From positions 1,798,001 through 1,862,000 of the forward strand of contig OZ251229.1 in assembly GCA_965240325.2 (NCBI GenBank): a stretch of DNA of 64,000 bases. The letters are read 5' to 3'. This DNA comes from Rebecca billardiae RCC1528. Its lineage: Eukaryota; Protista; Haptophyta. Each line of letters begins with the position of its first letter. Within the stretch, counting starts at the first letter, position 1. Under the pieces are notes generated by a model, which saw only the letters and a program-made list of their open reading frames with translations, searched no databases and was not told the origin of the DNA. Both the position numbers and the translations under genes were made by a program. This document shows positions 22,850 through 64,000 of this stretch, piece after piece.

Positions 22850-22952
22850 GTACCGTACCCCTCAAAAAATCGAAAACTCACCCTCCAACAACCCTAAAAA
22901 TCGTCCCCCGTCCCCTTTTCTTTGATCAAAAGATCTTTTTGACAACGTAGTG
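22850..22952 (-). mobile_element. Solo CACTA-like terminus
   Basis: The minus strand reads CACTACGTTGTCAAAAAGATC from 22952 with an A/T-run-rich subterminal region. No partner end found in the window. Confidence 0.35.
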
Positions 22953-23572
22953 AGGGCCCCCGGTGGGGCTCCACGCTACGCGCTCCGCCCTGCACCGCGG
23001 GCCATAATATATATATGTGTCCTCCTGCATGAAGAGCGACGCGACGCCATTGAGTATGGACGAACATCACCCACAGTCTGCGTGATGTGCATGCGAGGGC
23101 AGGTATTGCAGCATATATGCGAGCATGCAGCAAATGCCGATACACACCATGCCGAAATGGTGATGTATAAATATATACTTGCGCGTGGTGGGGATTTGTC
23201 CCTGGCTGAACGGGAAGAGCGACTGAGCCGACGGTGCCAAAGCTGCGCGCAGACTGCGCCAGCGTGTGGCAGCAAGGTCCCGTTTGTGAGCAGGAGAAGT
23301 TGCCACGCCGACTTAAGATGACCTTGTATATGATCTCGAGCGCCGGATAGTGGAGAGGAGCGGGTACTTACAGAGGAGCCAGTGTGGTTGGCCGATATGA
23401 AAGGACCAGCGCCCGCCATGATGATGATAAAGGATAGCTCCGTGGCCGATGAGCTCCGGAAATCGACTGCAACTACCTGCAGGACCTAGAAGACGATGGC
23501 GGCCCTTGTCCACCAGCTGCGCGTTGCCTTTCCAGCCTCCCGACACACTCGGTTATAACTCCGTTATAACGC

Positions 23573-23575
<3 letters not shown>

Positions 23576-23614
<39 letters not shown>
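23576..23614. repeat. (TA)n microsatellite
   Basis: Direct observation. Confidence 0.97.

Positions 23615-40434: not shown

Positions 40435-40505
<71 letters not shown>
40435..40505. repeat. (TA)n microsatellite
   Basis: Direct observation. Confidence 0.97.
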
Positions 40506-44679: not shown

Positions 44680-44785
44680 CGCCGGGCGCCGTAGCCACCC
44701 GTCTCAGACTTAAGTGGGAGGGCGACCGGACCGTTAAATCGGCCCGGCTGAGTCTGAGCACTCAATAATATATATATATATATAT

Positions 44786-45389
44786 CCATCTGGCCCTTGG
44801 CGCTGGCCTCCTCCGTGCCCTTCGCTCCACCCTAGGTGGGGCAGGGGGTGCGGGGTGTGACGCGCCCAGGGCGGCCAGGTTCCCCAGCATCAAGCACTGC
44901 ATCTGCAGCAGCCCGCCGGCGGGCTGGGCTGCGACATCGACTACCACCTCATCTGCTTCATCGCCCAGAGCGCGCTAGGCGGCGCGCTCACTCTCCAAGC
45001 CCCTCTTCTGCAGCTGCGCGCCGCTTGGCCGGCGCGCGGCGACGCGTACTACGACCTCATCCTCATCCAGGCGCCCACGCCGCACGCGGGCGCACGGGGG
45101 CGACAGCCGCGGCTGCCGCTTGCCGGAGCTGCTCGCCGCTAGGTCGGCGGGCGGCGACATCGACTACGACCTCACCCTCATCCAAGTGCTCCGGAAGGCG
45201 CTCGGCCGCGGCGGCATCTGCCGTCGCCGCCGCGTGCCCCAGGCCGAGGCGGTGCTCCATCCCGGCCCCGCTCCCGTAGGGGGGCAGGGCTGCGGGTGGC
45301 GCACTGTCTGACCTGGACGGAAGGCGCGGACGCATTCTATGTGTCTGTTGCACTCTGAGCCTGACGCTTGTCCGATGCTGCCACGTCGT

Positions 45390-45392
<3 letters not shown>
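44786..45392 (+). mobile_element. Putative non-autonomous retroelement bounded by (TA)n, sharing the 3' end of the adjacent LINE
   Basis: Flanked by (TA)n at 44768-44785 and 45393-45483. It ends CTGACGCTTGTCCGATGCTGCCACGTCGTTAA versus the LINE end CTGACGCCTGCCCGTTGCATACCACGTCGTTAA. Confidence 0.65.

Positions 45393-45483
<91 letters not shown>
45393..45483. repeat. (TA)n tract between two tail-to-tail elements
   Basis: Direct observation. Confidence 0.97.
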
Positions 45484-45487
<4 letters not shown>

Positions 45488-47360
45488 CGACGTGGTATGC
45501 AACGGGCAGGCGTCAGAGTCAGCAAGCTGTAGCAGCAGATCGAGCAGCAGAGACAAACACCAGGATCAGCGCTCCTCGCCGTCGTCCCCCCCCTCATAGT
45601 CGCCCATCACTCCATCGCCGAGCGGAAGCTCGACGCACCGTCTGGCGTCGACGCGCACGCGCCACCGCGGTGGTCGCGGTGCCACGCGTCGTCAGCAGTC
45701 GTCTCGAAGTAGTCGTCGTATGCAGCGCCCCCGCGGGCGCGTGCCCCCGGGCGCACGTGCGCCATGCGCGCGCGGGCGATGAGCATCTTGGCCTGGCCAC
45801 GCAGGCAGCGCATGCCCAGCTCGCGCCGCATGGTGCCGAGCAGCGCGCGCTCGGCGGCGGGGCGCGAGGGCGCGCTGAGGCGCGCGCGCCACGTGTCCCG
45901 CCCCATCTTGGCGATCTTCTTGAGGGTGAGGTCCACCTCCGCGCTCCACTCGCCGAACGCCCCCACGACAATCGGGACGATCGCGGGGAAGGTGTCGAGC
46001 CGCGCCTCGTATGGGCCCACCTGGCCCTCAAGCGTGCCGTAGACCTCGCGGTCGAGGAGCTGCAGCTGCTTGCGCCGCTCGCGCGGGACGAGTTCCGCGC
46101 GGTGGCGCACCGCACCGTTGCGGCCGTCGCTCACCCTGTAGCGCGACTGGCTCAGCGAGATGGTCTTGACCTCGAACAGGGTACAGTTGCCGTGCACCTC
46201 GGCACTCAGGTCCACCACCGGCACGCGCTTGCGGTCCGTGCCGAGCACCGCCTGCGCCTGGGCGGTGGACTGGGCGTGCACCGAGCCGAAGATCCAGGTG
46301 TCCTCCGGCACGGCGTACACACCGGCGTACGTGCGGAAGAACCCCGCCAGCACGCGGATCACCGGGTCGTGCCGGTAGCGTGCGACGTGGTCGCCGGGGA
46401 GCGCGTTGCGGCCGGACGCGCTGAGGAGCGCGTCGCCGTACGCGTCCACCCGGACGCCAGGACCCGAGCGCGTGGGCACGTACGCCCCGGCCTGGGCCAG
46501 CGGCGCGCAGACCGGGCTGGGGATCCCGAGCGCGCGCGCCGCGATCTCGAGCCACTCACCCTGGTGGTGGACCGCCGCGCTGCCGATCGGGAGCGCGCCC
46601 ACGAACGCGAGTGAGGCACGGTCCACGTTCTGGATGAGGTGCACACGGCGGTCGTCCCGCGAGAGAGAGCTGAGCTGCCGCCGCAGGAGCCAGCCGTGGG
46701 TGTTCTCGACGTCCTCCGTGATGTCCTTGGCGAGGCTGTAGTAGATGGTGCCGTCCACAGCCCGGCGTGCAGTGGGTGCCACCTGACCCGCCGGGAGGTG
46801 GAGCACGCAGTAAGGCTGCCGGTTGGGCACAGCTGGCGCCTCCTGCTCGGCGAGCTGGAGGCGCTCCCAGATGGTCGCGAGCGTCCGCCCGAGCGCCGAG
46901 CCCGACTGCAGAAACTGGCGCCATCCGGCGGCGCGCATGTCCACGAACGCGTCGCGGCCCACGCGCGCGACGATGGAGTCGCGCTCGAGGACGCCGTGCA
47001 CGGCGACGCCGCCCTGCATGGGGGCGTGGCGGTCGAGGAACGCGGGAACAGCGGCGTGGGCCCCCGCCCAGAAGGCGGCGGGTGCCCGCTGCGCCGCCGA
47101 GCGCAGGGCGAGCCCCCCGAGGCGGACGGGCAGGCGGAGCCGCTGCAGCATGATGTCGTCGAGCTGGTCGTCGGTGGGGAAGCCTAGCGCGACGCCGGCC
47201 TGCCGGAGGATGATAGCGTCAAACCGCTCACACGCCTCGGCGGTGGCGTCGGGCTCGATGTGGCGGAGGAAGTAGTCGAGCTTCGTCGAGGTCGAGTAGT
47301 GCGTGAGCACCCACAGCCCCTGCTTGTGCGCCGAGCCGAGCCTGTTGATCAGCTTGTTCG
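45484..47360 (-). mobile_element. 5'-truncated non-LTR retrotransposon, CRE-like clade with restriction-like endonuclease (ORF remnant 47360-45607)
   Basis: RT C-terminal/thumb motifs KLDYFLR...FD and LPVRLGGLAL; VDAYGDALL, RHD, the D...EVK endonuclease motif and PIVVGAFGE. The ORF begins abruptly at (TA)n 47361-47384. Confidence 0.88.
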
Positions 47361-47559
47361 TATATATATATATATATATATATATTACAGTCACTGTACT
47401 AGTGTTAGCAGTGACGATGACTGAGCGGTCGTCTATGAATGCCTACAACCCCTTGATGATGTTGGGCCCGATCCCCTCGGAGATCGGTCGTCTTGGCAGG
47501 CTCAGCTGCGCCTGGCAGTAGTGGCACTTGCGTCGCATGGGCGCGCACTGCCCGCGGCC

Positions 47560-48180
47560 GCGGAGACGTGCTGAACGTGCCTATGAGCGAGGCGCTTGAC
47601 ATGGAAGGGCGCTGCGCGCTCTCTCGCGGCTGCTCAGCTATACACTTTGTCTGCGCGGGCGCCTCCACGGCCGAGCGCGCCCCCCAAGCACCTCCAGGGC
47701 TGCCGCGCGGGAAACTTGGCTGCTGCGCCGAGGCCAGCGCACAGTAAGGTGATCCGCCAACCTGCATCGCCCACGCCGGTCAGCGGCGTGGGCGCAGACT
47801 GCTCGGCGCGCCCGGCAATCTGCTCGGGTCAGCTGCTCGCACACCTTTCGGGCAAGGCGCGCGACGCGCACGGGCTGGTCGTCTGCGGCAGGAGATGGTG
47901 CGCGCGAAGTGTGAGTGAGCGCGCCATGTTGCGCTGCGGCGCTCAGAACGTGCGCGCGCGTACTTGTCACAGCCACGCGCGAGAGAGGGCTCGGGGGCGG
48001 GGAGAAAGAGTGTGGCATGTGGCTCCTCTCGCGAGCCATGAGCCACCACGCTCGTCAGCATCAAGTCAGACCTCTCGCGTGCGAGCATGCACAGGTGCGT
48101 TCGAACACTCGCGTTCGCGCGAGCGCGCGAGCGCGTGGCACCACAAGTTGGAGCGCGTGAGTCGCTGCACAGCGTAGCTG
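47560..48180. repeat. Diverged fragments related to the 56.6-58.7 kb foldback arms
   Basis: catggaagggcgctgcgcgctctctcgcggctgctcag (~47600) resembles catgggagggcgccgcgcgccttctcgcggctgcccag (~57965); gccacgcgcgagagagggctc is also shared. Confidence 0.55.
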
Positions 48181-50248: not shown

Positions 50249-53676
<3,428 letters not shown>

Positions 53677-58691: not shown

Positions 58692-59190
58692 AGCCGCCTT
58701 GGCCTGCCCTGGCCGCGCGCCGACCGCGGGCTAAATACGTAAGGGGGTCGCCAATGAGAGGGTAAAGTGTTGGTGTCGGCGGCAGTCCGAGTCATCCATG
58801 TTATCATATAATTAACGACGTGGTTACGAATAGATGACGCGATTAATTAAATAACGGACCCGAAACGTATCGAAACGTATCAAACACTATCCGGACACTA
58901 TATCCGGACGACCTGTAACACTATTTTAGGCCATCATTTTACTCAGTTAAGTATGATAGGTGCTTTGACCATATATATGGCTCCAGGTGATCAGGGTCCA
59001 CACCAAGGGGACTTCGAATATTGATCAAGGGCCGTTACGACCCTTGTTATCCATATCAAAACGCCGATCAGACCGGCGCCCGACGACGGAGCGGCCGAGG
59101 AGCCTCTAGCTCCTGGCCCCGAAAACTTGGTCACCCCAATAGCACACGCCGCATCTCTCGGCGCCGCGAGCACCGCGAGCAGCAGGCATC

Positions 59191-63971: not shown

Positions 63972-64000
<29 letters not shown>
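63972..64000. repeat. (TA)n microsatellite at the window edge
   Basis: Direct observation. Confidence 0.95.

What the first reader, a model, noticed from the sequence alone, without database searches (positions are those of the whole stretch)
45393..47384. CRE-like RLE retrotransposon that appears to target (TA)n microsatellites
Seen: both the 5' truncation point (47360) and the 3' end (45484) abut pure (TA)n tracts, which are rare in such a GC-rich genome. The 1.75-kb ORF remnant has no stops, suggesting recent insertion. Known: RLE non-LTR elements (CRE/SLACS, R2, R4/Dong) are often sequence-specific for repeated targets. Inference: this is a (TA)n-specific family. The zinc knuckle before RHD looks non-canonical (VCAPL...VDAYGDALLS instead of C..C...H...C), and the nuclease motif reads VVD...FEVK.
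Basis: partly seen in the sequence, partly recalled or inferred. Interest (0 to 1): 0.8.

Follow-up and report, generated by a model that had tools for sequence, protein, structure and literature searches.

The report
Retrotransposon that inserts into TA repeats
This is a dead, recently inserted fragment of a still-active jumping gene (a non-LTR retrotransposon with a restriction-enzyme-like nuclease) that lands almost only in (TA)n microsatellites of a GC-rich algal-type genome, a target I found reported for no element of this class.

Summary
Window 45484-47360 (minus strand) is the 3' 1,877 bp of a 4.69-kb element. It sits between (TA)46 and (TA)13 and has a stop-free 584-codon remnant 99.9% identical to full-length copies.

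The genome holds at least 417 exact 3' ends but only 6 full-length 5' ends. Five full-length copies each carry an intact 1,518-aa ORF and differ by 0-0.11%, so the family is young and probably active.

Of the 3' ends, 79% are followed by eight A/T bases. 17 of 19 truncated copies and 5 of 5 full-length copies also have TA runs at the 5' junction. TA is therefore the target, not just a tail.

"RLE, TA-specific" is supported. "CRE-like" is untested.

A 606-bp non-coding family in the same TA tract shares only the last ~33 nt and is the likely passenger.

The scan had already noted this family on other DNA of this genome (s1-357922 and others). I rate it a new variant of a known kind.

The parts
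44767..44786 (.). (TA)10 remnant of the original microsatellite, at the 5' flank of the 606-bp element
44787..45392 (+). 606-bp non-coding repeat, the candidate non-autonomous passenger. It ends in the same CCACGTCGTTAA terminus and lies tail-to-tail with the LINE fragment.
   Evidence: 40 scored copies (509 candidates), 96-99% identical, uniform length; 208 exact 3' ends followed by 8 A/T; only the last ~33 nt resemble the LINE (29/33); a 90-bp 5'-truncated copy sits between TA tracts in L027.
45393..45483 (.). (TA)46 tract shared by the two 3' ends
45484..45606 (-). 3' UTR of the LINE (123 nt). The terminal 12-nt motif CCACGTCGTTAA lies at 45484-45495.
   Evidence: The 21-mer 3' end occurs 417 times in the genome, control 0.
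45607..47360 (-). ORF remnant: residues 935-1518 of the 1,518-aa protein plus the stop codon (45607-45609). It covers the post-palm/thumb region, the linker and the RLE. No RT motifs are left.
45757..46749 (-). Region modelled (residues 1139-1469): R2-type linker plus PD-(D/E)xK endonuclease
46165..46212 (-). Catalytic residues: D1318 (46210-46212), E1331 (46171-46173), K1333 (46165-46167)
   Evidence: D1318 and K1333 are invariant in A4; E1331 and K1333 are invariant in A1. Codons read. Strand positions follow the canonical PD-ExK arrangement in the model.
47361..47386 (.). (TA)13 at the 5' truncation junction

Best explanation
Window 45484-47360 is a dead-on-arrival, 5'-truncated copy of a young, probably still active family. 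The family is a 4.69-kb non-LTR retrotransposon with one 1,518-aa ORF.

The ORF has four parts: a lineage-specific N-terminus with an RGG box, a divergent RT, an R2-type linker, and a C-terminal PD-(D/E)xK restriction-like endonuclease (RLE).

The family integrates by target-primed reverse transcription into (TA)n microsatellites.

Shown:
- the element class;
- the copy structure;
- TA at both junctions genome-wide;
- conserved catalytic residues;
- intact, near-identical master copies;
- a 606-bp non-coding family that shares only the 3' terminus.

Inferred:
- The endonuclease nicks inside (TA)n.
- The transcript reads through into downstream TA, so its (UA)n tail anneals to the nicked target and primes cDNA synthesis. 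Each family's constant junction phase fits this: TTAA+TATAT for the LINE and TTAA+ATATA for the 606-bp family.
- Because the target is palindromic, one specificity can serve both first- and second-strand cleavage.
- The RT recognises the terminal 12-33 nt plus the tail, which lets the 606-bp element be mobilised in trans.
- Each insertion leaves TA on both sides, so tracts are hit repeatedly, as in this window.
For: Copy structure:
- The best 40 of 497 candidate regions were scored. All but two short fragments start at or within 6 nt of the element's 3' end and stop at variable 5' points; most are 95-100% identical.
- There are 417 exact 3' 21-mers against 6 full-length 5' 24-mers.
- Five full-length copies are each 4,692 bp with an intact 1,518-aa ORF and 0-0.11% divergence.

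Target:
- 328 of 417 3' ends (79%) are followed by 8 A/T bases, and 246 by TAATATAT.
- 17 of 19 truncated copies abut a TA run of 4 nt or more at the 5' junction, several of them over 100 bp long.
- 5 of 5 full-length copies have TA within 1-9 nt of the 5' end.
- The left flank of the tract is single-copy apart from two weak partial matches. The first ~140 bp of the right flank are single-copy.

Class:
- RVT_1 gives weak hits in 7 of 7 family members.
- A family profile hits R2 proteins at E 1.8e-8 and LINE-1 ORF2p at 1e-6.
- The AF2 model of residues 1139-1469 has pLDDT 89.7.
- Its top six Foldseek hits are all R2.
- D1318 and K1333 are invariant among 27 relatives and H1265/D1266 nearly so. 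E1331 is invariant in the 7-sequence alignment.

Passenger:
-.
- CCACGTCGTTAA plus four A/T occurs 710 times, control 0.
Against: - No biochemical evidence exists that the nuclease itself reads TA.
- No empty allele was available to show the pre-insertion tract.
- The 5'-junction table rests on the 25 longest copies only. The planned 100-copy survey was blocked by a fetch quota.
- 21% of 3' ends are not followed by 8 A/T bases, and 2 of 19 5' junctions lack TA.
- More distant relatives show no TA tracts, so the target is a recent trait of a small sublineage.
- Earlier notes of this scan report that tyrosine-recombinase elements in this genome also sit in TA tracts. That leaves room for a property of the tracts, rather than of the nuclease, to drive the pattern.
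- No significant RNA structure was found in the 3' UTR.
Confidence: 0.85

Rival explanations
1. The tracts, not the nuclease, set the target. (TA)n DNA in this very GC-rich genome is easily melted, cruciform-prone or nucleosome-free. Any nick-and-prime or recombinase machinery therefore gains access there, and the element's endonuclease has little sequence specificity of its own.
For: Ends of other, unrelated repeat families abut the same TA tracts in the fetched loci and the window. Earlier scan notes (s1-353006, s1-357914) report tyrosine-recombinase retroelements in TA tracts of this genome. The protein lacks the zinc-finger and Myb DNA-binding modules that R2 uses for site recognition.
Against: Junctions fall inside or at the edge of pure TA runs with near-nucleotide precision, which is tighter than a regional preference. 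Convergent targeting of a harmless repeat by several families is equally expected. This was not tested further.
Confidence: 0.1
2. TA is only the element's own tail, a poly(A)-like (TA)n, and insertion sites are otherwise random. The 5' TA would come from landing in the tails of older copies.
For: Tails of earlier copies are indeed reused: L028, L011, L021 and the window's tail-to-tail pair. Each family's constant junction phase suggests that part of the tail is templated.
Against: Most 5' junctions join single-copy-looking flank, then a short or long TA run, then the element, with no older copy upstream. The window tract has an essentially single-copy left flank and a single-copy first ~140 bp on the right. 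Even reuse of tails is TA targeting.
Confidence: 0.03
3. Survivorship: insertion is random, but in a gene-dense genome only copies that landed in harmless TA tracts persist.
For: Targeting multicopy or non-functional repeats is viewed as a survival strategy for such elements (PMC4640811).
Against: Copies are 99.9-100% identical, which is too young for selection to have removed nearly all non-TA insertions. The precision of the junctions is not explained either.
Confidence: 0.02

Closest known systems
R2 (28S rDNA-specific RLE non-LTR retrotransposon; solved structures 8gh6, 9nl2, 9nl3, 9dou)
   Different: The target is (TA)n, not 28S rDNA. There is no CCHC knuckle and no N-terminal zinc finger or Myb. 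The lysine sits in the canonical ExK position on strand 3, whereas the R2 catalytic lysine lies in helix 2 (PMC4838377). No 5' ribozyme was detected. Sequence identity in the matched region is only 10-14%.
Dong (R4 clade, (TAA)n), Togen (NeSL group, (TG)n) and some HERO families: microsatellite-specific RLE elements
   Same: They share the strategy of an RLE-type LINE that inserts into a simple repeat, with the repeat continuing from the element's 3' end (PMC3812793, PMC4640811).
   Different: The repeat here is the palindromic dinucleotide TA, which I found reported only for DNA transposons (rice Micron MITEs, PMC3812793). Clade relationship was not tested. The zinc motifs that PMC4640811 describes for Utopia are absent here.
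Utopia from oomycetes (NeSL group)
   Same: Several relatives of this protein (P0003, P0005, P0014, P0016, P0017) carry RNase H upstream of the RT. PMC4640811 calls that position unique to oomycete Utopia.
   Different: This element itself has no RNase H and sits in a different subclade from the RNase H bearers. Its target is not U2 snRNA genes, and it has no N- or C-terminal zinc fingers.
CRE/SLACS/CZAR
   Same: They are RLE-type, site-specific and early-branching non-LTR elements.
   Different: They target spliced-leader genes. Nothing tested here links this protein to CRE rather than to other RLE clades.
LINE/SINE partnerships that share a 3' end
   Same: A non-coding family (606 bp) carries the LINE's 3' terminus and the same target, and shows 5' truncation.
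   Different: The shared module is only about 33 nt (12 nt exact) plus the TA tail. The body has no recognisable small-RNA head, although that was not examined in depth.

Membership tests
Non-LTR (LINE) retrotransposons | Reverse transcriptase of the non-LTR type | tested here: met
   A family profile hits R2 RT (E 1.8e-8) and LINE-1 ORF2p (E 1e-6) over fingers and palm. RVT_1 is sub-threshold in the element (15.5 bits) but matched in 7 of 7 relatives. The motif A Asp (D737) and the motif C Asp pair (D837, D838) are invariant.
Non-LTR (LINE) retrotransposons | Copies share the 3' end, are variably 5'-truncated and have no terminal repeats | tested here: met
   417 3' ends against 6 full-length 5' ends.
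RLE-bearing non-LTR elements (CRE, NeSL, R2, R4, HERO) | PD-(D/E)xK restriction-like endonuclease C-terminal to the RT | tested here: met
RLE-bearing non-LTR elements (CRE, NeSL, R2, R4, HERO) | Cys-His (CCHC) motif between RT and RLE | tested here: not met
   The region has one Cys (C1219) and no CCHC pattern anywhere in the protein. The same holds across the 27 aligned relatives. The fold of the region still matches R2.
RLE-bearing non-LTR elements (CRE, NeSL, R2, R4, HERO) | No AP-type endonuclease at the N-terminus | tested here: met
   No Pfam hit other than RVT_1 on the whole protein or on the N-terminal pieces.
R2 clade | N-terminal zinc finger(s) plus Myb; target 28S rDNA | tested here: not met
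   There are two Cys in the first 600 residues and no C2H2 pattern. No Pfam domain is found. The target is (TA)n.
CRE clade | RT groups with CRE1/SLACS/CZAR in phylogeny | not testable with these tools
   No named reference sequences could be obtained by reference. All relatives found are unnamed metagenome proteins.
CRE clade | Insertion into spliced-leader RNA genes | tested here: not met
   Junctions are (TA)n.
NeSL/Utopia group | N-terminal zinc fingers and a C-terminal zinc finger plus RLE; oomycete members have RNase H upstream of RT (PMC4640811) | tested here: inconclusive
   Zinc fingers are absent. RNase H upstream of RT is present in five relatives but not in this element or its subclade.
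Microsatellite-specific LINEs (functional class) | Both junctions of most copies lie in one simple repeat | tested here: met
   3' junctions: 79% followed by 8 A/T. 5' junctions: 17 of 19 truncated and 5 of 5 full-length copies.

The most novel reading that the evidence does not exclude
This may be the first (TA)n-specific non-LTR retrotransposon, from a zinc-free branch of the RLE LINEs. Because the target is a palindromic dinucleotide repeat, one nuclease specificity could make both strand cuts. Template choice would rest on only 12-33 terminal nucleotides plus a (UA)n tail, which explains a natural 606-bp passenger with over 200 copies. Together with the tyrosine-recombinase elements reported in the same tracts, (TA)n would be a shared safe haven for several transposon classes in this alga.
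Probability: 0.35. Interest if true: 0.7.

Novelty: new variant of a known kind. Interest (0 to 1): 0.55.

Why it matters
Site-specific RLE LINEs, above all R2, are being developed as tools for inserting genes at safe genomic sites. How they choose target and template is the central question.

This family offers a natural contrast. It has the same linker-endonuclease fold but no zinc knuckle and no zinc-finger or Myb module. Its target is a palindromic two-base repeat. Its catalytic lysine is in the canonical position. It has five intact, nearly identical master copies. It also has a natural passenger that narrows the template signal to about 12-33 nt.

That makes target and template recognition directly testable with short substrates. 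It also adds (TA)n to the list of microsatellites used by LINEs. Finally, it helps explain why TA tracts in this GC-rich genome are long, interrupted and crowded with mobile elements.

Tried and rejected
- **100-copy junction survey.** I used pattern counts without letters instead.
- **N-terminal fold.** The N-terminal 240 residues folded alone gave pLDDT 34.7, so no conclusion is possible. Pfam finds nothing in residues 1-600, and there is no similarity to the RNase H of relatives.
- **5' ribozyme.** An Rfam scan of a full-length copy found only spurious AT-rich hits, so no R2-style 5' ribozyme was detected.
- **3' UTR folding.** Folding of the 3' UTRs gave z-scores of +1.5 and -0.8, so there is no supported structure.
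- **Is the target shared by relatives?** The closest usable contig (L038, 41% identity) reads TTTAATATATAAT about 110 nt after the stop, which is only suggestive. Three more distant contigs have no TA tracts. Three close ones end before the 3' terminus.
- **Metagenome scan.** A scan for the 3' motif plus TA found 0 matches.
- **Naming the clade.** All looked-up clusters are unnamed. The Atlas feature search was uninformative, and the Atlas fold library was unavailable.
- **The 159-bp stretch at 58812-58970.** I first took it for a third family, but it is single-copy.
- **Literature.** '(TA)n' cannot be searched as written. Word searches for TA microsatellites or dinucleotide repeats together with retrotransposon terms returned only the review PMC3812793, which lists TA targeting for rice Micron MITEs only. 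Repbase Reports are not in the library, so a prior description cannot be excluded.

Full report
**What is in the window**

Window 45393-45483 is a pure (TA)46 tract and 47361-47386 is (TA)13. Between them, on the minus strand, lies 1,877 bp that ends, in sense orientation, in CCACGTCGTTAA at 45484-45495.

This stretch carries a stop-free frame of 584 codons (45610-47360; stop codon 45607-45609). The window is 60-83% G+C. TA tracts of three or more units make up 0.88% of it.

**It is one copy of a large, young family**

The genome has 72 Mb in 41 contigs. A search with the fragment scored the best 40 of 497 candidate regions. Apart from two short fragments, every match starts at or within 6 nt of the 3' end of the element and stops at a variable 5' point; most are 95-100% identical.

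The 3'-terminal 21-mer occurs exactly 417 times (reversed control 0). The 5'-terminal 24-mer occurs only 6 times. That is the classic 5'-truncation profile of a non-LTR retrotransposon.

Five full-length copies (L031-L034, L036) are each 4,692 bp from the first base to ...CGTCGT. Each carries an intact ORF of 1,518 residues that begins 15 nt from the 5' end, and they differ from one another by 0-5 substitutions (0-0.11%). The family is therefore very recent and probably still active.

The window copy is 99.89% identical to L031 over 1,877 bp. It begins at residue 935, after the RT palm, so it was dead on arrival.

**TA is the target, not only a tail**

At the 3' end, 328 of 417 copies (79%) are followed by eight consecutive A/T bases, and 246 by TAATATAT. 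At roughly 32% A+T, such a run would follow a given site by chance about once in 10,000 times.

At the 5' end, 17 of the 19 truncated copies among the loci fetched abut a TA run of at least 4 nt. 15 of these have 6 nt or more, and several exceed 100 bp. All five full-length copies have TA runs within 1-9 nt of their first base, separated by a few variable extra bases.

The caveat is that the table covers only the longest copies, because a planned 100-copy survey was stopped by a fetch quota.

In the window, the DNA left of the tract is single-copy apart from two weak partial matches. The first ~140 bp to the right are single-copy. The original locus was therefore unique DNA, then (TA)n, then unique DNA.

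Tracts are hit repeatedly. Examples are head-to-tail and tail-to-tail pairs and tiny 3' fragments in L011, L021 and L028, and the pair in this window.

**What the protein is**

Pfam sees only a sub-threshold RVT_1 match (E 0.014, residues 668-876). The word-indexed search found ten relatives, the closest at 45% and 41% identity, all from metagenomes.

A profile of the family finds 879 clusters at E 1e-30 or better in the 1.8-billion-protein library. None of the ten clusters looked up carries a name.

Against solved structures, the profile's best hits are R2 proteins (E 1.8e-8), then LINE-1 ORF2p (E 1e-6), aligned over the RT fingers and palm. The conserved motif A Asp (D737) and motif C Asp pair (D837, D838) are invariant in the family alignment.

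The C-terminal 331 residues (1139-1469), modelled with 27 relatives, gave pLDDT 89.7 and pTM 0.87. The six best Foldseek hits in the PDB are all R2 proteins.

D1318 and K1333 are invariant, and H1265 and D1266 (the RHD motif) nearly so, among the 27 aligned relatives. E1331 is invariant in the 7-sequence alignment. In the model, D1318 opens strand 2 and E1331-x-K1333 lie on strand 3, which is the canonical PD-ExK arrangement. In R2, by contrast, the catalytic lysine sits in helix 2 (PMC4838377). The RLE assignment is thus tested and met.

**How it differs from described RLE elements**

The protein has 14 cysteines in 1,518 residues, with two in the first 600. It has no C2H2- or CCHC-like pattern.

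The Cys-His motif that R2 carries between RT and endonuclease (PMC4838377), and the C-terminal zinc finger of Utopia (PMC4640811), is reduced to a single Cys (SPVCAPL). That is true of all 27 relatives aligned.

The N-terminal 400 residues have no Pfam match and no relative. They contain an RGG-rich stretch at 278-340. Folding residues 1-240 alone failed, with pLDDT 34.7. What binds the target DNA is therefore unknown.

**Clade**

In a quick tree of 62 core sequences, the element groups with three GC-rich metagenome proteins (P0001, P0011, P0002; support 100). It lies apart from the five relatives that carry RNase H upstream of the RT.

PMC4640811 calls RNase H upstream of RT unique to oomycete Utopia, in the NeSL group. 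This is a lead away from CRE, not a placement. No named CRE, NeSL, R4 or HERO sequence could be brought in by reference, so 'CRE-like' remains untested.

More distant relatives show no TA tracts, and two of them end in A runs. The closest usable contig reads TTTAATATATAAT about 110 nt after its stop codon. The TA habit therefore looks like a recent trait of a small sublineage.

**A likely passenger**

Immediately left of the (TA)46 tract, on the plus strand, lies a 606-bp non-coding repeat (44787-45392). It is itself preceded by (TA)10.

It has 40 scored copies (509 candidates), 96-99% identical and of uniform length. 208 exact 3' ends are followed by eight A/T bases. A 90-bp 5'-truncated copy sits between TA tracts in L027.

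It resembles the LINE only in its last ~33 nt (29 of 33 identical), which end in the same CCACGTCGTTAA. That 12-mer followed by four A/T bases occurs 710 times in the genome (control 0).

The junction phase is constant within each family: mostly TTAA+TATAT for the LINE and TTAA+ATATA for the short family. This suggests that the first repeats of the tail are copied from the RNA. Neither 3' region folds better than shuffled controls.

**Most likely mechanism**

- *Shown:* the class, the copy structure, the junctions, the intact catalytic residues and the shared terminus.
- *Inferred:* the endonuclease nicks within (TA)n.
- *Inferred:* read-through transcripts end in (UA)n, which anneals to the nicked strand and primes reverse transcription.
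- *Inferred:* the RT picks its template through the terminal 12-33 nt plus the tail, which lets the 606-bp element ride along.
- *Inferred:* because TA is palindromic, the same specificity can serve the second-strand cut.
- *Inferred:* every insertion leaves TA on both sides and so renews the target.

The main rival is that the tracts themselves invite insertion, through easily melted or nucleosome-free DNA. This is suggested by other repeat families whose ends abut the same tracts and by earlier scan notes on tyrosine-recombinase elements. I give it about 0.1. A pure-tail reading and pure survivorship are unlikely, given the 5' junctions and the youth of the copies.

**Novelty**

Microsatellite-specific LINEs are known:

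- Dong on (TAA)n, Togen on (TG)n and some HERO families, all among the RLE-type clades;
- Waldo, Mino, Kibi and Koshi among the AP-endonuclease clades (PMC3812793, PMC4640811).

In the papers I could search, TA microsatellites appear only as a target of rice Micron MITEs (PMC3812793). '(TA)n' cannot be searched as written, and Repbase Reports are not held, so a prior description cannot be excluded.

The same family was already noted by this scan on other DNA of this genome (s1-357922, s1-363406, s1-355162), and the 606-bp partner on this window (s1-338799). My results agree with those notes and were obtained independently.

I rate it a new variant of a known kind, with interest 0.55.

Noticed in passing
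window 58812-58970 (minus strand): A 159-bp, AT-richer stretch lies between ATATATAT and TTATATGATAA and ends in the same 13-nt ACCACGTCGTTAA terminus. It is single-copy in the genome, so it is not a family. It could be an orphan insertion made by the same machinery, or chance.
   Followed up: partly
window 22950-23016; also L012, L014, L025, L029 flanks: Another repeat family has a terminus (...GCACCGCGGGCCATA) that abuts TA tracts. Its first 8 nt in the other orientation (TAATGGCC or TATGGCC) resemble the 5' end of the LINE (TAATGGCC).
   Followed up: no
L022, L023, L027, L035 flanks: A further repeat ending ...CCTCAGAAAAGTTTAATCATA lies directly against TA tracts or against 5' junctions of the LINE at four loci.
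   Followed up: no
L005, L013, L018, 3' flanks: After the TA tract that follows the LINE, the sequence GTCTAGCC... begins at three loci. This looks like the start of yet another TA-associated element, and scan note s1-372044 mentions the same motif.
   Followed up: no
window about 47530-47800: A different repeat starts ~140 bp right of the TA tract. Its ~265-bp matches occur as inverted pairs ~700 bp apart elsewhere in the genome, as for a ~1-kb element with long terminal inverted repeats.
   Followed up: no
P0003, P0005, P0014, P0016, P0017 (metagenome relatives): RNase H (RVT_3/RNase_H) sits at the N-terminus, ~400 residues upstream of the RT, in RLE-type LINE proteins. PMC4640811 describes that position as unique to oomycete Utopia.
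   Followed up: partly
L041 (marine metagenome contig), 3' flank: A distant relative ends in an A run followed by a tandem 12-mer array (GGGACCGAAGCT)n, possibly a different repeat target.
   Followed up: no
window 53506-53675, 40435-40505, 23576-23614, 63972-64000: Four further long pure TA tracts (85, 35, 19 and at least 14 units) lie in one 64-kb window of a 60-83% G+C genome. No LINE 3' terminus lies next to them.
   Followed up: partly
window 44926-45189: The 606-bp element contains three imperfect direct repeats spaced 108-115 bp apart.
   Followed up: no
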